DNA from: Ascidiella aspersa
Lineage: Eukaryota
Reading direction: 5' to 3'
Length of the DNA stretch: 64,000 nucleotides
Assembly: GCA_963924565.1 (NCBI GenBank)
Contig: OZ004607.1
Span: 27,962,001-28,026,000 of the forward strand
This document shows, one piece after another, positions 1,375-58,500 of the stretch. Within the stretch, counting starts at the first letter, position 1. Every line of letters begins with the position of its first letter. Both the position numbers and the translations under genes were made by a program. Under the pieces are notes generated by a model. That model searched no databases and was not told the origin of the DNA. It saw nothing but the letters and a program-made list of their open reading frames with translations.

Positions 1375-1560
1375 CTAACTCTCAATCACGCTCTCAGGGG
1401 CGTACTGGTTCTTGTATGCCGCAAGTGGGTCGTACTCGCAGTACGCGCATGCGCACGAGACAATGTAAGGCATGACGTGTGTTGACCTTGAGCCGTCCGG
1501 ACAGGTCAAGGTCACGTTGCGGGTTTCGACGTCGTCCGGCTTGCAGCAGTGACAGTTGGT
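1375..1560 (-). CDS. Last coding exon: C-terminal half of CTCK plus stop
   Basis: TNCHCCKPDDVETRNVTLTCPDGS...SCACAYC...ES*; AG acceptor, phase 0. Confidence 0.92.
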   Translation of the reverse strand, partial: TNCHCCKPDDVETRNVTLTCPDGSRSTHVMPYIVSCACAYCEYDPLAAYKNQYAPESVIES

Positions 1561-37500: not shown

Positions 37501-40500
37501 TGCCTGGCCACTGGGTGTCGTGGTTTGGCCTCCTGTGACGACGCTGCTTGTCGTTGTGCTAACCTCACCCTGACTGGTGCTGCTCGACATTACGGTGGTG
37601 GTCGGGAAGACGCGGGTCGTTGTAGTCATAACAGCTGGACCTGCGATTCATTCGGAAAATTGGAAAACAAAATGCCGCAAATAATAAGCAAGAAGTTGAT
37701 GTCGCTAGTAGGACTTTAACGACACAAAACAAAAAGCATAGATGAGTTACTTCAAAAAACTGGCTACCCGAAAGCAAGTTTGTTTTTGGATTGTACATCA
37801 AAATTGTAATCAAGGTTAAAAAGAGATAAGTTGTAATACAGCCGATTTAAATCGTTTTCAAAATTACTCTCACCTATACATTACAATGCTTCAAGTACAG
37901 CAAGAAACACTAAGAAGAAAAATACAAACAAGACATTTTACTCACCAGACGTCGTAGTTTCCTCAACAGGCGAAGTCGTTGAACTGGACACCGGAGTTTT
38001 TACTGTGGTGGTTACGGAGGACTTCTCAGTGGTCGTCTCTACAGCCGTGGTGGTTTCCGGGCTCGAGTAACATCCGGTCAACTCCAGGCGGATGGCGGGA
38101 CTCACCGTCCAAGTCTTAGGAACGAGTCGAATCGCCTGGAATTGTTTTGTAAATAAGCTTACTTTTTAACTACTATACGGGCGAGTTATCATGACTCTGA
38201 TAGAATGCGAAAATAGGGAAGCATAATAGGGGCAACGAGTTTGGGCTACATCAGTGCAATGAAACTAGTGTAGCCAAATAATGACAGATAAGCGCAAAGT
38301 TGTACTGTGCTTTACGCAATTATTTTACATGTTTGGTATTCACTTAGTCCCGGTGATTAAAATATAGGGTTATGAGGCTGGATTCGCTCCTGATGTGGTG
38401 AAAGCTTACAGTATAAACAGCGGAAATTTTTAAAAACAGTCCCGTTTATCACAGCATTTATTTCACACAGCTGTGGGTATAAACTCAAAAATTGATGTAT
38501 CAATTTCTTATTCCATGGGATCATTTTCACTGTGGGGTCGCAAAGAGATAAAACAGGATTATATTTTTAAACGACGTCATGCACATTTCTCCAATGCTGT
38601 TACAAGCAAATTGATCTCAACGACTTCGTTAAATTATATCTACAAACCTTAGCGACGACGGATTCACTGAAAACCACATCGACCACGTACTCGGCGTCCG
38701 TATTGCCATCGAAGCTCTCCAATGCGCTCCACTCGCGCGTATCGCTGACGTCATCGGTTGTGTACTGGACCGCGAAACTGGTGACGTAGGCCTCGAAGCC
38801 CTCGGGCGTCAAACCGCCGCCAAGCAACACCCCGGTAACGGTGACTGGCACTTCAAAGTCGACTTGCACGAACGGAGCCTGGTCCTCTTCCGAAGGCATC
38901 CAGGACACTTGGTTTGGCGAGGCTGGGTCGAGTCTCGCGTTTTCGCTTGTGTCCTTGTTGCTGGAGACTGAGAGCTGCGGCTGACCGATCTGGTTTTCGG
39001 CGGCGACCTGCACTCCCATCTCCTTGTCGCACGCGGCTGAATAGATGAGAGTATTGATAAAATTCAATGCGTTGAATGTTACTCCTGTAGGCCTCAGGAA
39101 AATAATTTTTGACGAGCATGCACATATGGTATAAAGAGAACAACATGTTGTTTTCCTTCGGCCTTGTGTGCTTTGTTTATCTCTGGAATTTCCTTAAAGT
39201 GCCTGCACGTTAAGGGCTACATGTTGCTGGGAATAGACTGAATTACTGCAAAATTCGAAAAAGAAGGAATAAAAATATGCCGAATTACTTTTGTCAAGAC
39301 CAAGATACAGCCACTATAGCCTTTTCCTTACTTTACCCATACTTTTCTTCCAAAAAAGTGCAACAAAAAACTTCGACCTCAGGAACTTGTTTTACCTTGT
39401 GTTGTTTGTTTTTTTTGTTATTTGTTATTTGTTATTTTTTATTTATTTTTTTATTTTTTATTTATTAGGCAAGGATTTACCTTGTGTTGTTGTGGAAACC
39501 GCGACTGTCTTTGTGGTGGTCACCACGGAGGACTCGGTGGTAGATCCAGGAGTGAGAGGAGTTGTCTTCTTCACTTCAGTCGTCGTCGTCTCAACGACCG
39601 ATCCAGTGGTCGTCACCTCGCCACGCGGTGTCGTGGTCGCTCCGGCCTCTGACGTAGTGGTTCCTTCCGATGACGTCACGGGCGTTGTGGAGACCACCTT
39701 TTCGGTTGTGGTTTCGACCAGGAAAGGAGTGGTGGTGGATGACTCCTCCAGTCCACACCCACGGAATTCGACGCGGAGACTGATCGGACTCGATGTGGCG
39801 TCGCGAAGTGGGAAGACGCGGATCACCTTGACGGTTATTGGCTCCAGGAGGACGTTTTCGTTGATGGCAATATCGTCATAATTTCCTGGGAAGACTACGT
39901 CGACATCTTCCTCGGAGACTACTCCCGGCTCCTTCTCCAGTTCCACGCGCTTGGTGAGGAACTGGGTTGGCTCCGTGTCATCCGGCGAGAACTGGACTTT
40001 GTAGTTCTTCACGTATTCCTCGTTGCCTCCTCCTTGCGTCAGAAGCGACGTGATTTTAACCGGATGCGTGAATTTCACTTCCAAGTACGGACTCTGGTCG
40101 TCGTCAAGGGGCGACCACGATTCGGGTGCAAACTCGTTGTTCCCGGAAATCCGTGCGTTGATGGCGAGTTGATCGGACTTTTCCGATGATGCGCTGATGG
40201 CGTCATCCGGGATAAGATAGCTCTCCATTCCCATAGCTTCATCGCACAGCACTACAAAATCCCAACGCGCATTAATAGAATGTTTATTTCATCTCGGACG
40301 AAAACACACATTTTAAGATTTGAGAAATTAATCGCCAAGTCTGTAAAAAAATATTATTTTGATTTTCTTACCTGATGGTGTTGTGGTAATTTCAGCAGAT
40401 TTGCTGGTCGTTACCACGGTCGTGGTTTCTACTGGCGAACCAGTCGACGTACTCGAAGAAACAACCGATGTCGAAGTGGCTGTTTGTGGCTGGGAAGTCG

Positions 40501-43500
40501 ATGACGCAACACCAGGAGTCGATGACGTCAAAGCCGACGTGGACGAAACAGCTGACGTCATAGGCTGAGACGAAGTGTGAACCACGCCGCTCGTGGTGGT
40601 ACTGGCACCAGACGAAGGTAGGGAAGTGGTTGCTGCTGGCGTACTCTGACCAGCTGAAGTGGTTTCGCCGGCCTGTGATGAAGTGGTTTCAACTGGTACT
40701 TTGGTGGTTACCACTGTTGTGCTGGCCGGTGGTGTGGGTGTGGTCGTTACGGCAACGGACTTCTGAGTGGTCGAGCTGGATCCGCTGCTGGTGCTGGTTG
40801 TTGCAACACCACCGATCGTGGTGGTAACGGTTTCCACTTTGGTCGTGGTGGGGGCGGATTCCTTCGTGGTTGTCACGGTCACGACTGGGCCATTCGTGGA
40901 AGAAACCTAAAGGTAAATGTATTTCATATTAGTTGCAACAACAAATAAACGCTATGTCCGATTTAGTAACCGAAATGTGATTTTTTTGAAATTATGCTAT
41001 TTGTTAAAAATACTGATTAGACCTTTTAAAATTTGGTAAACAAAAAACAAAGCTAAATTTGAATTCAATTTCAATTAGGCGAAAAACAAAAAAATTTAGG
41101 AACGATTAATGACGTCATGAGATAATGCTATTCATTTGACATCTTTCATGGCATATTGTAAGGACTGCCGTAGAACGGCAAATTCATCTAAAACAGTAAT
41201 GCTTTATTTTATGCTTTATACAATTTACAATGACCACTGTGCATTCGTTGTGGTCGGTCGGTCTCGCTTACCACGGTTGTGGGGGCAACGGTCGTGGTCA
41301 CTACTCCACCGCTGGTCGTGGTCGTCACAGTTTTCACCGTGGTCGTGCTGGAAGCCTGGCCGAAGCAACCGATGACGTCAGCGCGCAGCGACGGGGTCTC
41401 GCCGTCCCAGGTACGGGGAAGCACCCTCAGAGCTGTGACGTCAGGAATCGGTTCGGGCAGAGTCGAAACGACGACGGAAGTGTCATCGACGTTGGCCTCG
41501 AAAACCTAAACAGTAAGTTATACGTCATAACTGAGTACATAATAAAATGATCTATTTTGATATCTAGTAGTTTGGATAGCAATAGATATTTTTTTTAGTT
41601 TTCTGTAATCAAGGTCGAGTTCCCTTAAACTTGCCAGTTAAGCAACGATTCATTTTTTTTTTAATTTCATTCTGTTAAACAATAATTCAAACAAAACATT
41701 AAAACCTGTGGGCAAGCCTATTACCTATTTTTGTTATACGCTAAATAAAGATATTATTTACAAAAATACAGATTAAAACACACTTTAGGGCTGTGTAATT
41801 GCAAAAAACACATGGGATCGTTGTTGTAAATCATTGATTAAGGGGTCAACAAATCGTTAATACATTAAAAAAATACAATCAAAAATACCTTAGGCGAAGA
41901 TGTGTACTCGTCCAGGACAAACGACCAAGCACGTTGGGCACCCACTGGTTCGAGTGTGTACATGACGAAGTAGGAAGACGTCCATTTGTTATCTCCAATA
42001 CTACCCTGGGTCAGAACCTCCATAGCGGTAACCGGGGTGTCAAAGTCAATCTGCAAACAAGACACTTCAACATTAAAACCGGTTATCAACATAATAGAAT
42101 CTAACACGATAATATTATTCGAGAATCTCCAATCACTGTCCACAATAATCTCTAGCAAATTAAAACATTATCATCGGAAAACCAATCTTTACCCAGTTGA
42201 AATACACATGTAGGTGCTTTTCGGATAAGTAACATGTCCTAATAGCTAAGTGAAAAAAACTCTTAACCTGCAACCATGATGGATTATCGTCAGGAGTCGG
42301 GTTCCAAGCGTTCAGCGACGGCGTTATAAAGTCAGTTCCCTTCGTGGCAGCTGAAATGTCGATCTTGGCGTTGTGAGCCAATTCAGGGTTGCTGGAAGCA
42401 ACGTAGGCCGAACCAGGAACTGGGACGCCTGTTAGTTAGACGAGTTTAGATACCAATAGTACCAGAGGTAACAACTATATCACGGCTTCTATTTATCCTA
42501 AAGTTTATATTAGTAGTCATTCTGTTGCTAGAGCATATGTTTGGTTTGCAATATTTGGGCAAAATTTTGATCAGATGTGCCACAGATGGACTACACAGCT
42601 TGATGACTACTGGATTGTAATCATCTTTAACCGAATCTTCTATTAAATGCGAATCATTTGTACGATAAACTAGTGAGTGTAATGTACGGAACAATCGGAA
42701 CATATTGCTGTATGCTTACCCTTGTACTGGGTCAGGATCGATACGTCCACGCACTCATCCGCAGGAGTGGTCGTTCCTTCAGTGCTGACAACTCTCACCG
42801 TGGTTGTTTCGCTCACTTTCTCGGTGGTTGTGACAGTGGTGTGTTCGCCTGTACCAGATGTGGTCGACACTGGTGCGCCACTCGAAGTGGTGCTCTGGCC
42901 GATGATTGGTGTTGTGGTGGAGATCTTAACCGTTGTCACTTCAACTCCGCTGGTTGTCGTGGTGGCTTCAGCTGGCCCAGTGCTGGTTGTTACTGGTTGC
43001 GATTCCGTAACTGGTGCACTTGTTTTGGTCACCTTTTCAGTCGTGGTTTCGACCACCGCCGGTCCACTGGTGGTGACATGAGATTGGCTGGTAGTCGATA
43101 CTGGTCCAGTGCTGCTAGACGTTGGTTGGCTGGTGCTAACAACTCCTGGTGCCGTGGTGGTAGTTACAGAAGCAGGACAACCGTGAAGTTCAACCCTGAG
43201 GCTGATTGCTGGTGTTTCTGGACTTAGGGGTTTGGTCGGGTAAATTCTAATCACTGTCAAGGTGACCTGCTTGCCAAGGAAGTTTTCGACTATGTTGGTG
43301 TCGTCAATGTTGGCAGGGAAAACCTAAAAAATGTCAAAAATTGTTTATTAGACATTTATTAAATTATTTCCATACTTTATCGACATGTACTTTAGCACTT
43401 TAAAAAGGCGAGTAAGATTACGTGGAATAGGATTAATTAAACGTTCTATGGGTAACGCTGTGTAGAGATTTCCCGATCAGCTGCAAAACATATACATCAC

Positions 43501-46500
43501 ATATCCAACCTTGGTCACTTCAACTCCGTCGACGACTTCGGTAAGGTCCTGTGGCGCTTCACCGGAGCTCGAAGTTTTAATTGTAAACTCGGGCACGAAC
43601 TCTCCGTTCTCACCGCCCTGGGTTAGGATCGATGTGATCACAACTGGGGCCTGGAATCGAATTTCGAGGAACGGCTCTTCGTCAACATCTAGCGGCGACC
43701 ACGACTCGGGCTGATCGTCCACTAGGGTCGACAATCTCGCCTTGAAAGACTCACGGCCCGGCTTCTGACTTGAAGCGTTGATGTCCGAGTCGGGAATTTC
43801 GCGATTCTGCATTCCCATTTTCTCGTCGCAAATTTCTGAAAAGCAATAACAATATTGCGCCATTTATATTACAAAAAGCAAACCGTTAGACATCCGAGAT
43901 TTTTTTCTCTAATTAACCAAAAGAAAGTAAAGAAGTAAATTGTAAATGTATAGTGGCTCATTCTTCCCATTGGCGAAAAGAAGGCTGGGAATGCCTGAAG
44001 TGTCAGTAATGTTCAGACCCAGTCTCAGGACAACCATTCTCCTAAAAGGAGACGGTACCTCCACTTGGAGGTAGGGCCAGAGTTGAAATGCGCATCGGCA
44101 GAAGGTCAACATTTTCGCCTTTTTGGTTTTGGTGTAGATAATGTAAGTGTCAGTGATTAATAGTTTAGTATTTATACTGCCAAAAAAACAGTGCTACCCA
44201 GGAAAAAAATGGCAGGACACCACTCCACAGTTATCCGGTTAAAGACCACCGTCCGTTAGACATCCGAGCCCATTTTCAGGGTAGATGGCAGTTACTACCC
44301 GATTTTGACCCATTTATTTCTCTTACCTGGCAAAACAACTTCGGTTGTTGTGACTATGCTGGTGGTCGTGGTGACCAGGGTTGGTTTGGACGTAGATGTT
44401 TCTTGTACCTCTTCGGTGGTACTGGACACACTGCTGGTTGTCACGACACCGCTGCCGGTGGTGCTGGTAGCAGATGGACCAGATGTGGTGACCACTGGTT
44501 CAGAGCTGGTTGCCACTGGCCCAGATGTTGTTTCGCTCGTCGTGACTCCCTCGGGTTTCGTTGTAGTCAAATGACCAGCCGAAGTGGTGCTAACACTCGC
44601 TGGTGATGACGTGGTTGGTCTGACACCAGCAGTAGTTGTTGTTTCGGACGGGATACTCACAGTGGAAATTACCGACGAACTGGTCGACGTTGCCACACCA
44701 GAAGTGCTGGTTACACTCTTGCTGGTAGTCTCGCCGCCAGGAGACGAAGTGGTAACCACCGCAACGGTAGTGGTTGGCTCGGTGCTTCGGGTGGTTGTAA
44801 CTTCGACGGGAACTGATGACGACGGTGTGCTGGTTGTTTCGGAAGGTTGTCCAGTGGTGGTGGACACTCCTGGAGCACTGGTTGTAATGCTCGAAGTGCT
44901 GGTTGCAACACCACCAGCAGATGTTGTCGTCACTCCTGCAGAAGCCGAAGTCGTCTGTTCCGGACCTTCTGTGCTCACGATTGGTTTCTTTGTCGTGGTC
45001 ACCACCTCTGTGGTCGTTTCAGTCGCCACTGTTGTAGTGGTAGCTTCAATCTCCTTGAAGCAGCCACGGAGCTCGAATCTCAAAGCCGGTTTGTTGTTCT
45101 TGTTCCAACGTGTGGGGATCAATCGAATGGAAGTTAGCAGGGTAGGTTTGGACAAACGGCTAACCGCCACCGAAGTGTCGTCGTCGTTTCCTGCAAACAC
45201 AGCCTGTCCGTCCGAACTCTTAGCAGTTGACCATTCGTCGGACGAGTCGAGCTTGTACTCGACTGTGTAGTCAGTAACAAACTCGGACGTGCTCTCACCG
45301 GCACCTTGAGTGACAACCGAGAAGACGTACAAGGGCTTCACGAAGTCGACTTCGATCCACGCACCGTCCTCGTCGCTAACATCTTCCGCGGTTGGAATCC
45401 AGGATTCGGGAGCGTTTAGTCCTCCAGCTCCATTTTGTGGCGTATTGCTTGAAGCAGTGATGGTCGGCTCGTCAATCACCTTAACGGCTCCCCATTCCAA
45501 TCCCATGTTTTCGTCGCAAATCTTCGTGGGTGGCTCGGTGGAGGACGTTGTGGTCGCTTCGCCTTCCAAAGTGGTGGTCTCCGTTGCTTTTGTAGTTGTC
45601 ACGACCACTGAAGAGGTCGCGGGCGCAGAACTGGACGCTACAACTGGAGTGGTTTTCTCTGTGACGACAGTGGTGGTTTCTTTGGTGGATACGACTGACG
45701 GGCTTGTGGTGGACGAGCCAACAGTTGTGGTCTCACCGGCAGGAAGTGTGGTCTTTACCGTGGTTTCAACTGTTGTTTCAACCACCACGGGGGTTGTGGA
45801 CGGCTCTACGCAACCGATTAATTCCACTCGCAAGCTCAGGGGTGTGTCTGGTGTTGGGCGAACGACGTAGATGCGGATCACGGTGACGTCGATTGGCTCG
45901 ACCGTGTTCTCAGTCACGCTGCTGTCGTCCACGTTGCCTCGGAAAACTTTAGGCACGTGCTCGTACACGTTTCCGTAGGGAGTCTCCATCTCAACGATCT
46001 CGGTGATGTCAGTCAACTCCGACTCGTCGTTCGGCGAGTACTTGATCTTGTACTCGGGCACGAATTCTCCGTTCTCACCACCCGTTGTGCGAATTCCGGT
46101 TATCTTTACTAAGGTGGGGAAGCGAATCTCCAAATAGGGCTCCTCATCGCTGTCTTCGGGCGACCAAGAGGACGTGGTGTCATCTTGTGGATTCGGAATA
46201 AGTCTGCCCTTTTCTGCCTCACTTCCTGGTTTCTCGGAACTCGCGGTGATAGCATCGTCGGGAATTTCTCGGCTCTTCATTCCCATTTCCTCGTCGCACA
46301 ATGCTGAAAACAAAACCCAAATGAATATTAGCAAAATATAACACAGTTAAAATACACTACAGCACTTCAAATTTATCACGGAAACATTTCGGAACTTACC
46401 ACAAAAAATAATATTATGAGCTATATACCTTTCGTTGTCTGCTCAACAGTGACCACTTTACTGGTACTTGTTGAAACGAAGGCCGTTGTTGACGAGCTTG

Positions 46501-49500
46501 ATGCACTGGTTGTCACAGCTGGTCCTTTTGTGGTGGTTTCAGCACCAGTAGTTGTGGTTTCGCCAATGGCCATCGTGGTCGTAAACGAACTGGAGGTGGT
46601 GCTTTGACCAGATGGCGATGTTTCAACACCAGTTCCAAGTGTAGTTGTAGTTAGAGCAGCACCAGGGGTGGTTGTTTGGCCGGATGGTGTAGTCTCCACA
46701 CCAGTTTCTTGTGTAGTTGTAGTTATACCAATACCTGGGGTGGTTGTTTGGCCAGATGGTGTAGTCTCCACACCAGTTCCTTGTGTAGTTGTAGTTATAC
46801 CAACACCTGGGGTGGTTGTTTGGCCAGATGGTGTAGTCTCAACACCAGTTCCTTGTGTAGTTGTAGTCATACCAACACCAGGGGTGGTTGTTTTTCCAGA
46901 TGGTGTAGTTTCAACACCAGTTTCAGTGGTAGTGGTGGTCTGAACTCCACCAGGTGTTGTTTGCTGGCCGGCTGATGTAGTTTCATAAGCAGGAGTAGTT
47001 GTTTCCGCTCCGGTTGGTGGAGGAGTTGGTGGCGGTGGTGGCGGTGTGGTTGTATGGGATCCTTTTGTGGTAGTTTCGGAACCAGTTGGCGTGGTTGTTT
47101 CAAGAGAGTTAAGGGATGTAGTCGATACAAATACTTCCGAAGTGGTCGGAATCACTTTAACGGTGGTGGTGGAAACAACTGGTGGCACTGAAGAAGTCAC
47201 GCCAGAAGAGAAGGTGGTTGTCGTTCCACCTGTTTGTTTGGTTGTCTCACCTGACGGGTGGCTAGTGGTTCCTTCAGAACCGGTAATGGTAGTTTCAACC
47301 GATTTGCTAGTTGTCACACCTGATAGAGTTGTGGTATCGACGGGTTTTTCAGTGCTGGAGACAGCGGATTTAGTAGTTGTTTCCGATCCAGGAGCGCTAG
47401 TGTTAACACCTGATGACACGGTGGTTTCATGTGAAGGATTAGTGGTTTCAAATCCAGGGGTTGTCGTAGTGTCATGTGCTGCACGAGTAGTCGTAGCTGG
47501 TACTTCGGTAGTAGTAACTATTTCCGTGCTGGTGCTCTTGACAGTAGTGGAAGTGAGGATCTTAAAGCAACCACGAACTTCTATGCGCAACGCAGGCTTC
47601 ACGCTCCACACTACGGGGAGGATTTTAAGCGCGGTAACACGTTCGATTGGCTGGGAAAATTCAACCTGCACAACACTTGTGTCATCTTCGTTGGCATCAA
47701 ACACAGTAGGCGTTGCACCGTCGTCAGTTATCGGACTCCAAGTATTGCCACCATCCGTTGAATACTGTACATCGATTGCCTGCACGTATTCATTAGATTT
47801 GCCAGCTCCTTGCGTCATTATAGACGTTACAATAATTGGGTGTTCAAAGGTAACATAAAGCGATGGGTTTGTGTCATCTTCTGTTGGCTTCCATGCAACT
47901 GGCTCGCCGTTTTCGTTCACATTATTAAGGCGTGCTTGTTCAGCCAATTCGCCATTACTGGAAGCAGAAATGGTTGGATTCAAAATGGTGTTTTCTAATC
48001 CGTACTCGAGACCCATTGCGTCGTCGCATATCTTGTGCGCCTCGGCAGTTGTGGTTGTAACGGATGGTGGAATCGTCTCGGTGATTAGTGTTGGGCCAGT
48101 GGTGGTCGTCACCGCTTCTGAGCTGGACACTATCACTGGTGTCGTGGTTTCGCTCTCCGTGATTGTGGTTGTGGTTACGACCTTTTTACCAGTGGTGGTC
48201 TCGGGAAACTCACTGGTCGTTGGGGTCACGATCTTTGTGACTGTCGTTGTTGTCTGCTTCACTGTGGTGACAGGTTCGCTCGATGATTGGTGAGGCACAG
48301 TAGTTGTTGTCGTTCCAATGACCGAACCAGATGTGGTTGTTTGACTTGCGGGAGCACTTGTTGTGGTTTGGCTACCTTGTCCAGAGGTGGTCACTTCACC
48401 AGAAGGACCGGTTGTTGGAGTTTGGCTATCTGGACCAGAGGTGGTAATTTCGCCAGATGGACCAGTTGTGGTAGTTTGACTAGCTGGACCAGTTGTGGTA
48501 ATTTCACCAGATCGACCAGTTGTGGTAGTTTGACTAGCTGGACCAGAGGTGGTAATTTCACCAGATGGACCAGTTGTGGTAGTTTCACCAGACGGAACAG
48601 TTGTGGTAACTTCACCAGATGGACCAGTTGTGGTAGTTTGGCTAGCTGGGCCAGAGGTGGTAACTTCACCAGACGGACCAGTTGTGGTAGTTTGGCTAGC
48701 TGGACCGGAGGTGGTAGTTTGGCCAGCAGAGCTTGAAGTAGTGCTGGAGCTCACAGGCACTGTTACGGTTACAACAGTCTGTGTTGTGGTTTCGACCACT
48801 GCCGGAACTGTTGTGGTCACTCCTTCCTTCAAGCAGCCTCTCACTTCAACCTGAAGACTCAAGGGAGTCTCAGGTTCTGGACGTTTCGGATAGATGCGGA
48901 CAATGCGAGCCACAACTGGTTCGTCGAGAGGGTGACGCACCACCGTGGTGTCATCATAGTTACCAGTGAATACACGCGGCAAGACTTCCTCTCCATCGCG
49001 AGTCGTTTCCGTTACCGATATCTCAACAAGATCACTCTCGTCGGCGGGAGAAGTCTTGACTGTAAATTCGGGAACAAACTCCCCGTTTTCTCCTCCTTTT
49101 GTAACAAGGGAAGTTATCTTGACAACTCCCGGGAAGCGAATCTCTATGTACGGCTCCATGTCGCCATCTAGCGGCGACCATGATGTCGGTTTCTCGCCGG
49201 CAGGTGTTTCCTTGAGCACGACGTTATGCGCTTCACTTTCAGGCTTGGACGATGAAGCCACGATGCTTTCGGTTCCGGAAACGGTATCTTCAACCGGCAT
49301 TGGTTCGTCACAAATTTCTTGATGAAAAAAACGTCACTATTTTTTTAAGTTTTTTCTTACAGTTTTTATACTTCTGTTTAAATTAAATTGTATTTTATAC
49401 CGAGCGTCCTTTTTAAATTATAAAATCGAACTATTTTGTTTTAACTGTTATAAAACTAACAACAACCCTTACAAAGAGTTGTTATGTTATAGTTCCTTAT

Positions 49501-52500
49501 AAAACAAAAGGTTTGTTAGTCGACGACTAAATTTACTTTGCAAAAATGCATAAATACCAAAGGATTTAAAATAGGCAAACAAAGGTGTTAATAAGGCGTC
49601 CAATTACCGACGGTGGTGAGTTCGGTTGTCTTGGCAACAGAAACGGTCGTTGTGACGTGCTCTTGTGATGACGTCGTTTCGGTTTGAGTGACTGGCGTCG
49701 TCGTGTGCGCAACGCCACCACCTGTGCAATGAACACACATGTTCAGGACAATAATAAAATAATGTAACCTGCGTTTGTTAATTAACATTGAGGTTATGTT
49801 TAAACCCGATGGTTATTCTTTTTCATAAGGTTATTCATGTTACCATATTTATTTACAACCATAAATTCAACTCACAATTATTTACGGTTCCTATTAAAAC
49901 GTGTTTTTTTGTTTTACACCCAAAACAACAAAATGTCAAATAAACTTTTAAATTAAAAATAACTAACTTGTTGTTGTTGTCATAGAAGCTGGTGTTGTGG
50001 TCTCTACTGCTTCACTAGCAGTTGTTGTCGGGACCATCTTTATGGTCGTGGTGGAAACAACTGGTGCGGAGCTGGTTGTTTGACCAGTAGCGCTTGTAGT
50101 GCTGACAACTGCCTTAGAAGTGGTAGACTCACCGGCGGGACCAGTGCTGGTAACAACCACACTGCTGGTTGGCGATGTTTCGATGGTCGTGGTGGTTTCA
50201 ACCGTGGTGAAACCTTCCGGTGTGGTAGTTTCCTCCTGAAAAAAAAAGAAATTTGCATTAAGTAGTGGACTATAACTTTTAACCGCCCCTCGCTACAACA
50301 ATAATTTTTATGAATATATAGTTCAAATACGTCCATTATTATGGAATCCGAAATCAACAGTGTTTAACTTGTCGATTACTCTTCACTGAAGCAAATACTT
50401 TATAAAAAGTGAAACTAGTTTGAAAAACGAGTAATATGCACGATCGAAGACAAACGTCTGATCTGGTGTCCTGGAGTTGCCAATTTAAATAAATTGATAC
50501 TCAACAATATACAGCGATGGAGTTAAACCTTGGCGGCACTTAGTGTTGGCTGCTATCGCAATGCAGCAGTGGAGTAAGTCTCAAGACATTCAGCAAATTA
50601 GGAAAATTCCTGACGGCTAATCTAATAGTTTGGTAGATGACACGTATTACGTTCCTGTTTATGTAAAAAGACGATCAATTTAACACACATACTTTAACTA
50701 CACCCCTATAGTCAGGGTTAACACCTACTAACCCCCAAAAAATAAGCATGCTGCAATGAAGTAGTGAGTTTACCACAAATAATTATTTCCAGGATTTTTG
50801 TTCGAGGGGCATGAAAATTTCCTGAAATAACGTTATGTCATAACGTTACGGAATATAACATTTAATTTTGAAACGCCTGCTGTTCTCGTGCTAAATTATG
50901 CATCTGAAAACAAGAAAAAAATCGTTGATTTAGCCATAGAACACGGTAAGATATACTAATTTCTAATTAATGTTGAAAACAAGTTGAATTTTTCACCCTC
51001 TAGCCAAAATTGATGACAAACATTCTTGGAAACTAAAATAACGCGAACTAAGCAAACAACTCAAAAATAAGCACGTTTCGTACCCTGCCTAGTCAAAAAC
51101 TCTAAATATTTCAATGGTTTCTCACCACAGGCGTCTCTGTGGTGGTGACAACTCCCTTGCTGGTGGTCGTTTCCACGGTTGTCACGGCAATCTCCTTGTA
51201 GCATCCGAGAAGATCGACGCGGAGCAAGATGTTCTTGTGCCAGGCCATTGGAACGATTCGGACGGAAACAGCCTCCAACGGGAATGGAAGTTCAACCTGA
51301 TCAGTGTACAAATATGGTTTATTGAATATTTTTCTGTAAAAACAAAATTTCTGAACTTGATTTGTGGTCCAACGCATCATTGGTATAAAACGTGTTTTTC
51401 AGTAAAAAAACGTTTTGTATTTTTTAAAATAAAATATCATGCTGATAACCAATGATGGACTTACAAGCTGAGAAAATGTCGGACTCGGGAAAAGAGACTC
51501 AAGTAAGACTACGTAAAACTATCTGACGTGCGCATGCGCATTCCTAAATTTCGAAATTGATAAGGCGGCTGTAAATTGTAAAGGCAGAATATCATATGGA
51601 TATTCTTTAAACATGTATTGTGGGTGGATCAATTTGTCACCCCTATGAGTGGATTGCTTAACATCCACGTTACTTTAATGACGTAAATAATTGAAATTTA
51701 GGCTGTAGAGTCAGAAGGACACGGGACTCGATAAAATCGCACATTTAGCCGGAGTCGGACTCGGATTAAATTTTTAACTCGTATTCGGACTCAGGGTATT
51801 TTAAACCGACTCCGCGGCCCTGGTACTACCGTTTTTTGCAAAAACCTTCCTCAGCTTCAAAGATCAACCCCAATCAAAACGACAAGGCCGCAAACGCAAA
51901 AAAATAAAAAATAAAGTATCCAGCACCTTCTTCACGGAAGCGCCGTCAGAGCTGCCGCCGAACACGAGGGGGTTTCCCTCCGTGGTGAGCCCGTTCTCGT
52001 CCACTCTCCTGAAATCCTGGCCGTCCTTGCTGGCCTCGACCGCGAACTTGGTGACCCAGCCCTGGTCGCCACCGCCCTGGATAAGCACGTCACTGATGAC
52101 CACTGGCTGGACGAAGGTGATCTGATAATATAACAGTTGGGTTAGCAAAGGCGGTACAATAGCTTTATTAATTGGGTGCTCTATTTGGAAAATAAAACGG
52201 AGGTACAGGGTAGGCATCGGTGTTGTAATGACTTAAGTCAGTGACTTAAGTTATTTTATTGACTTGACACTGTTTTTAAATGGCTTGACTTAAGTCATTT
52301 AAGTAAAATGACATAAAATGAGGTGTTCCCATTGAGCAATATTTAAACAAAATGAGTCATTTATCATAAATTGTTCCACACCAATTTACTTGCAATATGT
52401 TGTGTTTTTGCTATTTTTTTGTTGAATTATTGCTCTATCGTCAGACGACTTTACCAATTTGAATAGTTTTAATTTTATCACAAGACTTGACTTGGAGTTG

Positions 52501-55500
52501 ACTTGCTCTAAATATGAATTGACGGGGACTTGACTTGCGCAACTGATGAGATGGATTGGGACTTAGGAAGCTTTTTTAGGAAAAAAAACAAGAAATCCGC
52601 TATGTGACATAAAACGTTTATTGAATAAAATTGGTCACCTACCCTGGGAAAAAATATGTGTCTGTGCTGACAAACCAAATATCAGAAGGCAGCCATTCCT
52701 TATGTCCAATTCCAGTTAGTTAATCCAGCAAGCTAAAGTTATTCGAACATTTGAATATAACGGTAACCTGACATTTCTTATAATCTTCCAAAGGGCTTAT
52801 ATTTAAGGACTGTTCTTAGGGTGTGTGATTAAGTAATTAAGTTTTATTTGCCAAGCAAAAAGATAAGCACAAATGAACAAACTGTCGACGGCAAAGCAAA
52901 ACTGCATCATCAAAATGGTTGGCACAGCGAGGGACCTAATAAGACCTTCAAGTCAGCTATGCCGTTTAGATTTTAGGTATTTATGGCAGAAAAGAAATAT
53001 GAAAATACCCAATTTAGTATAGTATTCAAACAGTTTCAATATAGTTTTGTAACGGATAACAAGTTTCAACGAGTAACAATGTTTTAAATATGAATAAGAG
53101 CCAGAATTTTCTTCCGAGTACGGACGATGCCTGAGTTACAACTAAGAATAACCTTCTTAGATGTTTATATGCGCATGAGGAGTAAACTTAGACAGTTAAA
53201 ACGGAATGTTACCTCCAAGTATTGCGACGCCATGTTGACGGAAGGTGCCCAAGCCAACGGTGAGTTGTCCTCGTCCTTGCTGTTTAGCCGTCCGTAGTCG
53301 GGGGAAATACCAGCCTTGACACTCGAAGCGCTCAGCTCCGCAGCGCCGATGGTGTTCGAAGCGTCGACGTCCAAACCCATCTCATGACGACACACTTCGG
53401 GCGTCGTCTCGGCGACAGTGGTAGTGGTTATTTCCACAACTAAAACGCATTCAAACAAATTAAATTTCTGTTTTGCTACGCAATGGTAATATAAGAAGCA
53501 AGGACTTAATTTGCGGAAGAGGCTACCCCTTTTATTTTCCAAGTTGAACCGCCGCACAGGCATGTTTATCAAGGATCAACCTTACCAAAAAGTTAATGGA
53601 AAATATGTTGATCCAAATTACCCCATAAATAACTTGGGAAAGGTTCGCCTTGAAGATTAACTGTCTCACAAAAATGTCACGTTTAATTAAGTATATAACT
53701 ACGAATACAATGCATATAATATGGCCAAAATGCGTATTTTGTCAATATACCTTGTTTGCTGCATTCGTGGTTATCAGCAACAATGTTTGTTTACAGACCG
53801 TAATGGTAAAGCCGATTTGGTATTTAACAAATACTGGTATTTGTGTTAACTCAGGCATTTTACACGTGTATCAGAATTTGATGTGACATAGATATTAAAT
53901 TCTAACCTTTAGTAGTTGTTTCGACAGTGGTCACTGGCGATTTCGTGGTGGTCACTTCGCCTTCCGCGGCGGTTGTGGTAATTTCACCGGACGGAGTGGT
54001 TGTGGTAATTTCACCGGCTGGAGTTGTTGTGGTAATTTCACCGGCTGGAGTGGTTGTACTGGAAAGGGGCGTGGACTTGACAACCTCCTTTGTGGTGGTT
54101 TCGACGCTTCGCGATGTTGTAGTTCCTAAATAGTCGAAAAAATCGTATATGGTGTCTGGTTTGGGTGTGACAAGCCGTTGTTTTCCTGTAGGCTACTCAC
54201 TACCATATATCAACTTGACTTATGAAAGCAAAGAAAAAATATTTCTTGAAAGTTTAACGGTTTGAAAAAAACAAACAATGGACATATATTTACAACACAG
54301 TGCTGAATTTATGTCAAACCACATCCATGAACTCACCAGCAGCCGATGTAGTTATTGTTGGCTCGGTTGTCTTCACCACTGTTTCAGTGGTGGTTGTAAC
54401 CAAATGAGGTTTGGTCGTGGTTTCGGCAACCTCCCCGGTGGTAGTTTGTGGTTGAGTTGCGGCAGTTGTGGTTGTTTCTTCGGCTTTACCGCAACCGTGG
54501 ACCTCGATGCGGAGGCTGATCTTTTGATCCTGAGGAACAACGGGGAAGACGCGAATCCTCTTCACAAGGATTGGAGAAGGTAAGCGGTGCTTGACAATCG
54601 TGTGGTCGTCATTGTTGCCTGTACAAAAAATGCATTTAGCATTAAGTTTGACAACATGAATTTGGCAATCAAAAGCTACTTTACAAATACATGGTGCGAC
54701 TAAAAATTTCCTATATGTTTTTCTTTGTATTTATTAATTTTAAATAGAATTCGGAAACAAATTTAATTGTTAATTTAACTAAAGGAGTTACCAGGTCGTT
54801 TGCACAAACCGTTGAATCGCAAGTAAATAAGTAAGTAATGTTTATTTTTCTGTTGGCGCTGATATCAAAATACACAAGTAGGCTATGACAAGAAACAAAT
54901 TCATGCGCGATACGGACGGAGCAGCGATGGGTCTAATGGACCTTCCAATCAGCTACACGGTAAAGGTAAAATGAATCTAACTTGAAATAAGGCAAAACTT
55001 TTTAACAAATAAGTAAATAGACCACATAAAAAAGTGAATACACATAGGTTAAACGATGTGAAAAAAACAATGAACGTTGTGAATAAGCGTCTGTTTAAAA
55101 GGCACAACATTAGGCAAATCTTATAAGACCAGGTTATTCGTGACAGTCTTTTTAATCCTAATATTTTACCTTCAAAGATGACAGGTTCAACAGCAACAGC
55201 TCCATCCACTTCACGCGATTCCTCCACCATCTTGATTCCATCCTTGTCGGCGAATTCCAACTTGAAGCTGCCAACGAAACCTCCGTCCTCGCCTCCCTGG
55301 GTGGACACAGCAGTAATCTCGGTCATCTCCAAGAAAGACACTTCCAAATAAGGAGCGTCGTCTCCCTCATTGGGCGACCACGACAGCGGTGTGACGTCAT
55401 CGGCAGTGGGTTGGGAACGTACTCGGCCGTACTCAGGACTTCTCTCAGGCAAGTATGACGAAGCCCAGATTAAGGTGTCTTCGATTTTTCCCGATTCCAT

Positions 55501-58500
55501 GCCAAGGGCATCATCGCAGTATTCTACAATGTTATTTACAGTTTAAAGGTAAATTGCTTACATGGTTAAATTTGAAAAGATGCAGCTGTATGTGATTCAA
55601 CTACTACCTGTCTTAGCACAATTCCAAGTACAGCACACTTAAATTGTTTAACCATGTAAACAAGGTTCGGATTTATGTCTGTCTATTTCAGCCTTTCTTA
55701 ACCTGGGGTAAATTTTTCCTCACGAGGTAAATATCCTCGTTTTAGGGGCTAAATGAGCCATCATTCAAAATATCCACATCGGCTGACGGGAATCATTTTC
55801 GTTGTGCATTATCTACTACTCTACCAGACATTGAACAACTCATTGCCAAAAATCAAGGGCAGCCGTCACATTGCATATAACTGATGGAATCTGTTTTTTA
55901 ATACTTTAACACCATTTTATATTTTGGGGGTAAATTTGATATTAATCTTTGTTAAAAGAGAAAAACATGCAAAAAAGGTTAAGAACCACTGGACTATTTA
56001 GATACAAACATTTACAAGAAAATGTTGATATATAACCCAATGTAAAATGATATACTGCGCAGCCAAAAAAATGGTTGCTTACTTGCGGTTGTGCTGCTTT
56101 GCGGCGCCTTGGTCGTGGTTTCAGCAACCTCGCCGGTTGTAGTTTGTGGTTCAGTCGCGACGGTTGTGGTAGTTTGTGGTTGAGTTGCGGCAGTTGTGGT
56201 TGTTTCTTCGGTTTTGCCGCAACCGTGGACCTCGATGCGGAGGCTGATCTTTTGATCCTGAGGAACAACGGGGAAGACGCGAATCCTCTTCACAAGGATT
56301 GGAGCGGGTAAGCGGTGCTTGACAATCGTGTGGTCGTCACTGTTGCCTGTATGAGTTTTGTATGTATTAAAACGTTTAAAGTTTCAGGTTTTTGCCTTAA
56401 AAATTATTGTGACTTTACGAATAAACCAGGTGCGACAGAAAAATTTTGAAAAAGAGTACTCTATTTTTGTAATATTGGGATAATTTTTTCAAGACAACAA
56501 TTGTTTGTTAATAACGTTATTTGTAAAACAATTACCAGGCTTGTTCTTCTGGCGAGAAGCCTTTAAATACTAGATCCGGTGTTTTGAAAGTTCACAACTC
56601 GTTTTATAGTTCACATGAAAAGTTTCAAGTGATGATTTACCTTCAAATATGACAGGTTCAACAACAACAGCTCCATCCACTTCACGCGATTCCTCCACCA
56701 TCTTGACTCCATCCTTGTCGGCGAATTCCAACTTGAAGCTGCCAACGAAACCTCCGTCCTCGCCTCCCTGGGTGGACACAGCAGTAATCTCGGTCATCTC
56801 CAAGAAAGACACTTCCAAATAAGGAGCGTCGTCTCCCTCCTTGGGCGACCACGATAGCGGTGTGACGTCATCGGCAGTGGGTTGAGAACGTACTCGGCCG
56901 TACTCAGAATTCCTCTCAGGTGAGGAAGACGAAGCCCAGATTAATTTGTCTTCGATAGCTCCGGATTCCATACCGAGAGCATTGACACAGAGACCTGATG
57001 TAAAACAATTTTGTTCAGATCCTATCATAAATTTTCTAAAAACACAAAACTAAAGAATATATAGTTGCCAACTTAACAAAAAACAAAAACGACTACTTCT
57101 TACCTTGAGTGGTAACCTCAGTAGAAGACGAAACTGTTGTCGTAACAAAAACTGTCTTTTCGGTGGTCGAAACCTCTACTATGCCACTAGTGGTGGTTTC
57201 TGCAACAGCGCCGCTGGTGGTAGTTTGGATATCTGCGCCACTGGTGGTCGTTTCAGAAACTGGAAGCGTTGTGGTAGCCACTGCCTTTTCACAAGAGCAA
57301 CATCTAAGGAAACAAAATGCAATTTGTATAAGTAATGTATGGCTCCGGTAACGGCTAATAAAATATCGTACATATGAATTGTTCAAACATTTTTTTAGAG
57401 AACCGTCTGAAATGAGCTAAACAAAACACCCGAATTATTTGGGAAAATATCTTTAGTGCAATTCAACGATAAACACCCATTTGTTAGACAATTGTTGCAA
57501 AATAAAATTGTTATTCGTTGAGTTAAAATTTATCGTTATCAGAACAAATAATGGATCCTATATTTTTCAAGGTATAGTGTACATTTCCCATTGGGATGAC
57601 ATCAACTTGCAAAATATACATTTTTAAAGAAAAATATAATGTGCTGTCTCTTATTTTATGGATTTTGATTATGGCATTTCACTGTTACAGACAAAGGTTT
57701 AATGTGCTGCCTATCAGTTCGAATTACATTGTTTTCGTAATGCATTGTTATTATTGGTAAACATTTACTATGAATGCACCTAAAATTGACGAATTAATAA
57801 CGTGAAGAAAGTTAACAAACCTCAAAAGCCGTAATTCGAAATTATTTCGATTTAAAATGGAGAACTTTTTTAAGGGAGCGTATACCTATCATCATCGTAG
57901 TTCTGCAGATAGTAACCAGCTTGACATCGGATGGTACAAGCCTTCACGCACTCGGAACGTCCGTTCTCGCAGGTGCACCTCTCGCATTCGCTCACTGCCC
58001 AACTGTCTTCGTTCTTCAAAAGTAGCCAAAGGATGTGTTAAGAGTGTCACAAAAGTGCCTCGTTCGGATGCATTTTTGAGATTTGTTAATTTAAAATAAA
58101 ATCCCAATATGCGAGATGGATAATGTGGTCATTATCTAAGTCAAATTGATTCTGCAGAAGGAAACCTAGGGCCATTAGTAGGGATGTGAGATAATATCGG
58201 TTTGAAGCCGATACCAAGAGGTAGTATCAGTGCTCGCCCGACATCAAATTAATATTAGAATTAGGCATGATTTGCGACCGAACGCAGCGATACGGTAAAT
58301 CTAATCACCCGAAAAATATTACTTATAAACCTTTAAATTTTGTCTGTTTTGCTTGTTTAAGCATTGTAATGACGTCATTTGGTTTGGATCGGATCGCGAA
58401 ACTTTTGTTCAAGATATCGTGTATCGGTATTGCAATTAAATGTTAGGTATCGGACATTCCTATATTATTAGCAGTATACTCCGTGCCTAAAACTTATGGC

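What the first reader, a model, noticed from the sequence alone, without database searches (positions are those of the whole stretch)
37946..56994. Array of 11 discoidin domains in a strict A/B alternation
Seen: N-to-C order A,A,B,A,B,A,B,A,B,A,B. Type A has SWSP..D..P(Y/F)(L/I)E, an acidic insert before (V/I)F.(G/A)N.DD, and ends (L/I)SL(R/Q)(V/I)E..GC without Trp; type B has P-x-x-W before the final strand (PMAW, PVVW, PTRW, PRTW, PKTW). All are strongly acidic and separated by O-glycosylatable spacers. Inference: an ancestral A-PTS-B-PTS cassette was amplified five times, giving regularly spaced paired binding or cross-linking nodes; the acidity argues against factor V/VIII-type phospholipid binding.
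Basis: partly seen in the sequence, partly recalled or inferred. Interest (0 to 1): 0.75.

Follow-up and report, generated by a model that had tools for sequence, protein, structure and literature searches.

The report
Alternating discoidin domains in sea-squirt mucin
A giant mucus-type gene of a sea squirt carries eleven sugar- or matrix-binding "discoidin" modules of two kinds that alternate along a heavily glycosylated thread, an old and conserved layout whose purpose has not been tested.

Summary
On the minus strand, 37946-56994 is 21 GT-AG exons (10,686 nt, phase 1 to phase 1) encoding exactly 11 F5/8 type C domains in the order A,A,B,A,B,A,B,A,B,A,B. They are separated by Cys-free Thr-rich linkers. 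Per-exon identities, profiles trained only on other species' proteins, and a 64-domain ML tree all separate a derived type A from a more canonical type B. Type A has no Trp before the last strand, a long acidic beta-hairpin and a 3-residue deletion. All 11 domains are acidic (net -8 to -20).

The whole window is one giant secreted gene with TIL, VWC, LDLa, PTS and a cystine knot; VWD matches lie just upstream. Its collinear orthologue is Ciona intestinalis "mucin-5AC-like", which shows A,B,A,B,A. The array therefore predates that split.

An A-PTS-B-PTS duplication unit is supported by two single phase-1/phase-1 cassette exons. The A and B trees are only weakly congruent. "Regular spacing" fails: linkers run 47-381 aa.

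PTS-separated acidic discoidin arrays also occur in amphioxus, acorn worm and lamprey proteins. This is a new variant of a known kind. Function and expression are untested. Apart from notes on this same window, the scan notes I saw do not describe this array.

The parts
56219..56989 (-). Discoidin domain A1, in 2 exons. The intron (56640-56347) is phase 1 and lies inside the Gly codon of F-E-G|N.
   Evidence: HMM hits, splice sites, type A
54491..55518 (-). Discoidin domain A2, in 2 exons with the same intron position and phase as A1. Its exons are 92.6% and 93.1% nt identical to those of A1, while the introns do not align.
51201..53392 (-). Discoidin domain B1, in 3 exons. Junctions are 53213|52121 and 51927|51296, both phase 0. 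It is the weakest B assignment.
48833..49312 (-). Discoidin domain A3, intact within exon 49317-46429
47567..48028 (-). Discoidin domain B2, in the same exon as A3
46429..49317 (-). Single 2,889-nt exon, phase 1 to phase 1, holding A3-PTS-B2-PTS
45810..46298 (-). Discoidin domain A4, intact. The AF2 model has pLDDT 88.9, and the acidic insert forms an ordered beta-hairpin at residues 99-116.
45060..45518 (-). Discoidin domain B3, intact. The AF2 model has pLDDT 89.9.
44327..46303 (-). Single 1,977-nt exon, phase 1 to phase 1, holding A4-PTS-B3-PTS
43177..43830 (-). Discoidin domain A5, in 2 exons. The junction 43510|43323 is phase 0 and lies just before VF.AN.
41365..42753 (-). Discoidin domain B4, in 4 exons. 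Junctions are 42720|42428 (phase 1), 42268|42050 (phase 0, same place as in B1) and 41889|41505 (phase 0, same place as in A5).
39755..40246 (-). Discoidin domain A6, intact within exon 40251-39481
38070..39031 (-). Discoidin domain B5, in 2 exons. The junction 38648|38135 is phase 0.
37946..56994 (-). The whole array: 21 exons, all GT-AG, 10,686 coding nt. Ten Thr-rich, Cys-free linkers of 47-381 aa separate the domains.
57873..62435 (-). Upstream context in the same gene: VWC (57873-58037), LDLa (58529-58783), VWC (59901-60194, below Pfam's cut-off; 61440-61892) and TIL (62169-62435)
1378..36052 (-). [quoted passage not shown]

Best explanation
The stretch is the central part of one very large secreted mucin-like gene of an ascidian. 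The gene has VWD modules upstream, then TIL/VWC/LDLa modules. Next come eleven discoidin domains strung on Thr-rich linkers that would be O-glycosylated. [quoted passage not shown]

Two discoidin subtypes alternate. Type B keeps the ordinary family hallmarks: the Trp before the last strand and the Trp in the middle strand. Type A is a derived, tunicate-restricted subtype. It has lost both of those Trp, has a 3-residue deletion near the N-terminus, and has a lengthened acidic beta-hairpin.

Shown here: the domains, their order, the two types, the exon structure, the acidity and the collinear Ciona orthologue.

Inferred: the pattern arose by tandem duplication of an A-PTS-B-PTS exon with symmetrical phase 1 before the split from Ciona. 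Some copies then gained or lost introns. The first A copy underwent a separate duplication or conversion.

Inferred function (about 0.4 by itself): like other VWD/cystine-knot mucins, the protein forms disulfide-linked polymers. The glycosylated linkers act as stiff spacers. The A and B heads are two different non-membrane binding modules, for glycans, matrix or particles, that give the gel its adhesive or cohesive contacts.
For: Domains and order.

Exon map: all junctions are GT-AG and the frame closes exactly at 3,562 codons.

Two cassette exons are phase 1 to phase 1.

Context modules over Pfam's cut-off: TIL, VWC, LDLa, Cys_knot.

VWD matches lie on the same strand 1.5-14 kb upstream, at G000:C1:28027559-28040011.

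Ciona XP_026696163.1 (P0151) shows A,B,A,B,A by type-HMM scores of 126/40, 30/112, 86/53, 24/59 and 78/46. It is collinear beyond the array, with 59/76 identity in a Cys-rich module.

ML tree of 64 domains: the A clade has support 84/89, B2+B3 has 97/70, win_A4-Ciona_d1 has 94/84, win_B3-Ciona_d2 has 100/97 and win_A6-Ciona_d5 has 83/84.

Holding all B rows together gives a tree 12.96 lnL better than the free search, with p-AU 0.80.

Type B is closer to solved discoidin domains: best E 3e-24 against 2.4e-12 for A, and TMq 0.76-0.82 against 0.64-0.72.

Type A has no match elsewhere in the genome: 10 matches of 13 candidates, all in this array.

F5_F8 domains in invertebrate VWD mucin-like proteins are in print: Lang et al. 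2016, PMC4948705, passages read.
Against: Expression is not shown. The one RNA run laid gave 23 reads, all partly on intronic repeats and none on exons, with about 6% of the run read.

Six of the 11 domains are split by introns and could be compared only exon by exon. They are therefore absent from the ML tree.

B monophyly was not found by the free search, and Ciona d4 sits on a long branch of 2.2.

A-tree and B-tree congruence is weak.

The Ciona model lacks a B5 equivalent and is N-terminally truncated, so the age of the full 11-domain array is not known.

That the upstream VWD exons belong to the same transcript is an inference from strand and distance.

No ligand, glycosylation or polymerisation was tested.
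Confidence: 0.72

Rival explanations
1. The duplicated unit was not A-PTS-B. It was B-PTS-A, a larger ABAB block, or single domains that were later sorted, so the alternation is not the trace of five A-B cassette copies.
For: The A tree has (A3,A4,A5) at 88%. The matching B grouping (B2,B3,B4) has only 26% bootstrap. In the ML tree Ciona d3 groups with A3 while B2 groups with B3, which is not a mirror image. The A3-B2 linker (268 aa) is longer than the B1-A3 linker (154 aa).
Against: Two cassettes are single phase-1/phase-1 exons starting at A and ending after the post-B linker. Every A domain starts at a phase-1 acceptor. Five unnamed ORFs begin at A and contain A-PTS-B. The alternative pairing predicts B4 with B5, at 19% bootstrap, against B1 with B5, at 46%.
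Confidence: 0.2
2. The gene is the tunicate SCO-spondin (Reissner-fibre protein), and the discoidin array is an expansion of SCO-spondin's discoidin module.
For: LDLa, TIL, VWC, discoidin, upstream VWD and a cystine knot are all SCO-spondin parts. Lang et al. 2016 report that some invertebrate mucin-like proteins group with SCO-spondins.
Against: None of the 150 best-scored TSP_1 matches (of 970 candidates) lies in or next to the window. There are 0 WSxW-type motifs on the window's minus strand. A dense TSP_1 cluster elsewhere, at C2:13.88-14.00 Mb, is a likelier SCO-spondin-type gene. The Thr-rich linkers are mucin-like.
Confidence: 0.05
3. A and B are partners rather than two independent heads. 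A binds B, or binds the glycans next to B, on a neighbouring chain. On this reading the alternation is a self-assembly code, for example for the regular mucus net of the endostyle.
For: Both types and their order are conserved between two ascidians. Type A occurs only in this gene. Loop residues of type A are invariant across 15 sequences: K23, W45, D51 and P54, with N76 and E78 nearly so. Which of these residues lie in binding loops is my placement by alignment to known domains, which is inference.
Against: There is no expression site, no interaction data, and no structure of a pair. Both heads are strongly acidic, which does not favour direct A-B contact without cations. Linker lengths are irregular.
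Confidence: 0.1
4. The locus is a decaying or unexpressed gene, and the pattern has no present function.
For: No exon cover in the RNA run laid.
Against: The 10,686 nt of predicted exons have no stop, and all 21 exons have GT-AG borders with closing phases. Domain-by-domain orthology with Ciona holds at about 50% identity. A neighbouring module is 78% identical to Ciona.
Confidence: 0.04

Closest known systems
Ciona intestinalis 'mucin-5AC-like' XP_026696163.1 (predicted, uncharacterised)
   Same: It is the collinear orthologue. Its A,B,A,B,A discoidin domains sit on Thr-rich linkers and are followed by the same Cys-rich, TIL, VWC and LDLa modules.
   Different: The model is N-terminally truncated and shows five domains, not eleven. 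It has no equivalent of B5. Domain identity is only about 48-53%.
Invertebrate VWD mucin-like proteins with F5_F8_type_C domains (hemolectin/hemocytin type; Lang et al. 2016, PMC4948705, passages read)
   Same: They are secreted proteins with VWD, TIL, VWC and a cystine knot, carrying discoidin domains in the middle and sometimes a PTS stretch beside them. Priapulus 'hemocytin-like' and Haliotis 'mucin-5AC-like' are among the hits.
   Different: Hemolectin has few discoidin domains and two more VWD units after them. Here none of the 91 VWD matches lies inside the window, that is, downstream of the array. There are 11 domains of two alternating types and long PTS linkers.
PTS-separated discoidin arrays of other deuterostomes: Branchiostoma floridae 'mucin-17-like' (P0180), B. 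belcheri KAI8516201.1 (P0017), Saccoglossus XP_006824113.1 (P0173), Petromyzon LOC116943709 (P0186)
   Same: They have several acidic discoidin domains separated by Thr/Ser/Pro-rich linkers. B. belcheri also repeats a multi-domain cassette.
   Different: Their domains do not fall in the tunicate A or B clades, except that three Saccoglossus domains sit beside them. None shows the A/B pair. In amphioxus the repeats are nearly identical, which points to recent duplication.
Sea-urchin Nectin and sea-star footprint proteins (PMC10057474, passages read)
   Same: These are arrays of tandem discoidin domains in secreted adhesive or cohesive glycoproteins. The paper notes that VWD with discoidin recurs in temporary adhesives.
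   Different: Nectin has six directly adjoining domains of one kind, no PTS linkers and no VWD or cystine knot.
Solved discoidin domains: factor V/VIII C1/C2, neuropilin b1, DDR1/2, CASPR2, lactadherin C2
   Same: They share the fold and the flanking disulfide. B3 reaches E 3e-24 and TMq up to 0.82; A4 reaches E 2.4e-12 and TMq about 0.70.
   Different: The window's domains are strongly acidic. The loop aligned to the third membrane spike is shorter and polar (alignments). Type A lacks the conserved Trp and has a longer hairpin.

Membership tests
F5/8 type C (discoidin) domain, Pfam PF00754 | Match to the family profile above the curated cut-off | tested here: met
   8 of 10 exon translations score over 28.2 bits (118.5 down to 28.3). 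The first exon of B1 and the third exon of B4 gave no hit alone. My own HMM places them.
F5/8 type C (discoidin) domain, Pfam PF00754 | One Cys at each end of the domain (the flanking disulfide) | tested here: met
   There are exactly 2 Cys in each of the 11 domains, at the first and last position. The bond itself is inferred.
F5/8 type C (discoidin) domain, Pfam PF00754 | Beta-barrel fold like solved members | tested here: met
   2 of 11 domains were modelled (A4 pLDDT 88.9, B3 pLDDT 89.9). Foldseek top hits are DDR2, neuropilin b1, CASPR2 and FVIII C2, at prob 1.00.
F5/8 type C (discoidin) domain, Pfam PF00754 | Conserved Trp before the last strand (my recollection of the family consensus; also seen in the PDB alignments) | tested here: inconclusive
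   Present in 5 of 5 B domains and absent in 6 of 6 A domains. Type A is a divergent member.
Gel-forming / VWD mucin-like proteins | PTS (Pro/Thr/Ser-rich) stretches | tested here: met
   The ten linkers have 52-60% T+S+P. Further Thr-rich repeat exons run across the window.
Gel-forming / VWD mucin-like proteins | VWD modules at the N-terminal side | tested here: inconclusive
   Four VWD matches over the cut-off lie on the same strand 1.5-14 kb upstream of the window. That they are in the same transcript is inferred, not shown.
Gel-forming / VWD mucin-like proteins | C-terminal cystine knot | tested here: met
   PF00007 scores 26.8 bits against a cut-off of 24 at 1378-1563.
Hemolectin/hemocytin type (3 + 2 VWD with discoidin domains between; as described by Lang et al. 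2016) | Two further VWD units after the discoidin domains | tested here: not met
   None of the 91 VWD matches in the genome lies within the window, that is, downstream of the array. Only the best candidates are scored, so weak copies could be missed.
SCO-spondin | Many thrombospondin type 1 repeats | tested here: not met
   None of the 150 best TSP_1 matches is in or beside the window. There are 0 WSxW-type motifs on the minus strand. The far N-terminal part was not read.
SCO-spondin | LDL receptor class A modules | tested here: met
   27186-27662 scores over the cut-off (42.4 bits). 58529-58783 (24.0 bits) and 20637-20894 (21.7 bits) fall just under the 24.1 cut-off.

The most novel reading that the evidence does not exclude
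The conserved alternation of a tunicate-only discoidin subtype (A) with an ordinary one (B) along a polymerising mucin is a self-assembly code. A and B heads make specific, cation-bridged contacts with each other, or with the glycans of neighbouring chains. This would set the geometry of a structured secretion such as the rectangular filter-feeding mucus net of the endostyle, whose protein basis I could not find described in searches.
Probability: 0.1. Interest if true: 0.7.

Novelty: new variant of a known kind. Interest (0 to 1): 0.35.

Why it matters
Giant mucin-like proteins with discoidin domains are common in invertebrate genomes, but almost all are annotated only as "mucin-like" or "uncharacterised". 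This locus shows that in ascidians the discoidin part is an ordered, long-conserved series of two distinct head types. One of them is found nowhere else in the genome.

That gives a concrete, testable handle on how such secretions bind their targets or hold together. The two recombinant heads can be tested for two ligand profiles, and the gene has one clear expression question. The locus is also a clean example of exon-cassette duplication, followed by intron gain or loss inside individual copies.

It does not change what is known about the fold or about mucin polymerisation.

Tried and rejected
SCO-spondin identity was rejected for lack of thrombospondin repeats.

Hemolectin-type 3+2 VWD layout is not met downstream of the array.

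Ci-GFM1 of Nakashima et al. 2018 (PMC6109156, passages read) is a different, chitin-binding gene.

The Styela endostyle transcriptome paper (PMC9953650, passages read) mentions only "mucin 5AC" and cannot be tied to this gene.

Five literature searches found nothing on alternating discoidin subtypes or on this gene. Supplements were not opened and may list it.

RNA support was sought and not found.

hmmalign and mafft --addfragments on whole-domain references misplaced short exon pieces. I replaced them with three per-segment alignments.

The long-protein search with the Ciona orthologue found no further long tunicate orthologues: 11 proteins at E <= 1e-10 among 8,000 scored candidates.

A spliced (joined) model was not built, printed or searched. 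As a result the six split domains are missing from the ML tree and from the structure predictions. B4's 11-aa first piece was left out of the identity counts.

Rows dropped before the tree: domain hits not spanning HMM positions 8-152; all but the first 2-3 domains of P0001, P0003, P0004, P0005 and P0009; and P0019, which duplicates P0175.

Full report
WHAT IS THERE. The window has no N and about 40% G+C. Its minus strand carries open exon-like pieces along all 64 kb. They encode Thr-rich stretches and Cys-rich modules.

Pfam assigns TIL, VWC and LDL-receptor class A modules, and a cystine knot at 1378-1563. VWD matches over the cut-off lie on the same strand 1.5-14 kb beyond the window's upper end, at G000:C1:28027559-28040011. 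The window is G000:C1:27962001-28026000 in a 308.6-Mb, 75-contig assembly.

The finding therefore sits in the middle of one giant secreted, mucin-like gene. That the VWD exons belong to it is an inference from strand and distance.

THE ELEVEN DOMAINS. Pfam PF00754 (F5/8 type C) is over its cut-off in 8 of 10 exon translations. The first exon of B1 and the third exon of B4 gave nothing alone.

An HMM built from the five copies that lie whole in one exon (A3, B2, A4, B3, A6) was run over 2,601 six-frame pieces. It gave 19 hits at i-E <= 0.11. All are on the minus strand between 38070 and 56989, and they assemble into exactly 11 domains. The other 11 rows had E >= 1.8.

I mapped every junction. 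The array is 21 exons, all with GT-AG borders. Together they make 10,686 nt, or 3,562 codons, running from phase 1 to phase 1. The finding's coordinates are the acceptor of the first A exon (56994) and the donor after B5 (37946).

TWO TYPES. I therefore compared the six split domains exon by exon. Three segment alignments were made, and identities were summed over them.

- Mean identity is 45.7% within A, 33.8% within B and 31.1% between A and B.
- The A|B split has 88% neighbour-joining bootstrap.
- A1 and A2 are 92% identical.
- (A3,A4,A5) has 88% bootstrap. Inside B nothing exceeds 46%.

As a test that owes nothing to the window, I trained type profiles only on other tunicate sequences: five Ciona domains and nine domains of unnamed database ORFs. 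These were labelled by position in their cassette. All 20 window pieces took the expected sign. The differences were +18 to +108 bits for A and -3 to -75 bits for B. B4's 11-aa piece was uninformative at -0.2, and B1 was weakest at about -23 bits in all.

The A motif is SWSP-x3-D-x2-P-(Y/F)-(L/I)-E. The motif (V/I)F.(G/A)N.DD is also present in B2, B3 and B4.

Further type marks seen in the alignments: a 3-residue gap in A after the first strand; a Trp in the middle of B (Phe in B1) that A lacks; and an aromatic residue right after the final Cys in all five B domains.

Every domain has two Cys and a net charge of -8 to -20.

WHICH TYPE IS DERIVED. B3 matches solved discoidin domains far better than A4. 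Best E is 3e-24 against 2.4e-12, and Foldseek TMq is 0.76-0.82 against 0.64-0.72.

AlphaFold models are confident: A4 has pLDDT 88.9 and B3 has 89.9. In A4 the acidic insert is not disordered. It is a long beta-hairpin at residues 99-116, with block pLDDT 93-95.

In the HMMER alignments, both types have a shorter and polar loop where factor V and pseutarin carry the third membrane 'spike'. Which loop is which spike is my recollection of the factor V/VIII literature, so this is inference.

A search of the whole genome with A4 found 10 matches of 13 candidates, all inside this array. Type A therefore belongs to this gene alone.

RELATIVES AND AGE. A search of 1.84 billion representative proteins with the A4-linker-B3 stretch (one exon) gave 1,178 proteins at E <= 1e-3, 323 at <= 1e-10 and 43 at <= 1e-30.

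Named hits include Ciona intestinalis 'mucin-5AC-like', Pocillopora and Acropora tandem arrays, Priapulus 'hemocytin-like', Haliotis 'mucin-5AC-like', and Saccoglossus, Patiria, Acanthaster and Branchiostoma proteins.

The Ciona protein (P0151, 2,281 aa, N-terminally truncated model) is collinear with the window. It reads A, B, A, B, A by type-profile scores, followed by the same Cys-rich, TIL, VWC and LDLa modules. One unassigned Cys-rich module is 59/76 identical.

Summed local scores pair A4 with Ciona d1, B3 with d2, B4 with d4 and A6 with d5. A5 is ambiguous between d3 and d5.

An IQ-TREE analysis used 64 Cys-to-Cys domains. From the window it used only single-exon copies; the dropped rows are listed under Tried and rejected. 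Its results:

- All tunicate domains, with three Saccoglossus domains, lie on one side of a branch (83/94).
- There is an A clade of 11 rows (84/89) and a B2+B3 clade (97/70).
- Orthologous pairs are win_A4-Ciona_d1 (94/84), win_B3-Ciona_d2 (100/97) and win_A6-Ciona_d5 (83/84).
- Ciona d4 is a long branch (2.2) left unresolved.

Holding all eight B rows together gave a tree 12.96 log-likelihood units better than the free search, with p-AU 0.80. B monophyly is thus at least as good as any alternative found.

The window's genome is therefore a tunicate. Earlier scan notes also call it a sea squirt. The A/B series predates its split from Ciona.

HOW THE PATTERN AROSE. A3-PTS-B2-PTS (49317-46429) and A4-PTS-B3-PTS (46303-44327) are each a single exon with phase 1 on both sides. 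Every A domain begins one or two codons after a phase-1 acceptor.

Five unnamed database ORFs begin at an A domain and contain A-PTS-B. This fits the same exon being present in other species.

This is what tandem duplication of a symmetrical A-PTS-B-PTS exon would leave. Other copies hold introns in different places:

- B1 and B4 share one at YLE|I.F (phase 0).
- A5 and B4 share one just before VF.AN (phase 0).
- A1 and A2 have one four codons further on (phase 1).

The introns were therefore gained or lost after the copies formed.

Tree congruence between A and B copies is only weakly in favour. {A3,A4,A5} has 88% bootstrap, while {B2,B3,B4} has 26% and {B1,B5} has 46%.

The leading A,A is a separate matter. 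The two exon pairs are 92.6% and 93.1% identical, but their introns do not align at all. This points to an old duplication kept alike by conversion or selection. Both copies are present at ordinary depth in contigs of two DNA runs.

WHAT DOES NOT HOLD. The spacing is not regular. Linkers are 47, 140, 154, 268, 381, 97, 246, 141, 211 and 93 aa. In one run a linker exon differs by a 27-nt in-frame deletion.

The array type is not unique either. Branchiostoma floridae 'mucin-17-like' has 10 domains. B. belcheri repeats a three-domain cassette almost identically. A Saccoglossus 7,459-aa protein and a lamprey VWD protein also carry acidic discoidin domains separated by T/S/P-rich linkers.

Lang et al. 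2016 describe F5_F8 domains as typical of invertebrate VWD mucin-like proteins (passages read). Tandem discoidin arrays are known in echinoderm adhesives (passages read).

FAMILY PLACEMENT. The gene is not SCO-spondin. None of the 150 best TSP_1 matches of 970 candidates is near it, and the strand has no WSxW-type motif. It is not the hemolectin 3+2 layout either, because no VWD match lies downstream of the array. It is best filed as a tunicate VWD/PTS/cystine-knot mucin-like protein with an expanded, two-type discoidin array.

FUNCTION. Nothing functional was shown here. The one RNA run gave no exon cover: 23 reads, all on intronic repeats, with about 6% of the run read. This says little either way.

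From the established behaviour of VWD and cystine-knot modules (polymerisation) and of PTS stretches (dense O-glycosylation), which I recall from the mucin literature and Lang et al., I infer a polymeric gel protein. Its stiff glycosylated rods would carry two kinds of polar, acidic binding heads.

Three observations argue that the two heads do different jobs. Each position has been conserved since the split from Ciona. Several loop residues of type A are invariant across 15 sequences: K23, W45, D51 and P54, with N76 and E78 nearly so. And type A is restricted to this one gene. Whether those jobs are ligand capture, adhesion or chain-to-chain assembly is open.

VERDICT. The cassette-duplication reading is partly supported, but the event is ancient. 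Regular spacing is refuted. Cross-linking is untested. This is a new variant of a known kind, of moderate interest.

Noticed in passing
window 54337-56994: The A1 and A2 exon pairs are 92.6% and 93.1% nt identical (10 synonymous and 12 non-synonymous codon differences in the first exon). The introns inside and after them do not align at all. Both copies are present at ordinary depth in two DNA runs.
   Followed up: partly
window 53999 (Thr-rich exon 53907-54125): Contigs of run X2 lack 27 nt in frame here, while X1 matches the window. This is a length polymorphism of a mucin-type repeat.
   Followed up: no
window 34076-34363 and 33361-33678, minus strand: These Cys-rich modules have no Pfam family at E <= 0.1. 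The first is 59/76 (78%) identical to Ciona P0151 residues 1452-1525, far better conserved than the discoidin domains.
   Followed up: partly
window 15811-18054, minus strand: Exons that look like a very divergent galactose-binding or discoidin-like domain get no Pfam hit and are not found by my discoidin HMM. Another first-reader note covers them.
   Followed up: partly
window 51701-51900, 52101-52700, 54701-54900, 55501-55900: These are intronic high-copy repeats, with word depth in the hundreds to tens of thousands in both DNA runs. The bulk of the 23 RNA reads of X3 lie on the one at about 52.3-52.7 kb and run on into unlike sequence.
   Followed up: no
G000:C2:13.88-14.00 Mb, plus strand: There is a dense series of thrombospondin type 1 repeat matches over about 120 kb. 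This is a likelier SCO-spondin-type gene than the one in the window.
   Followed up: no
P0017 (Branchiostoma belcheri KAI8516201.1): A three-domain discoidin cassette is repeated almost identically. Domains 2/5 and 4/7 differ by branch lengths of 0.02 or less. One member of each trio lacks the Trp before the last strand.
   Followed up: partly
window 7349-10123, 24569-25873, 46429-48830, minus strand: Long, nearly perfect Thr-rich tandem repeats of different units lie in different exons of the same gene.
   Followed up: no
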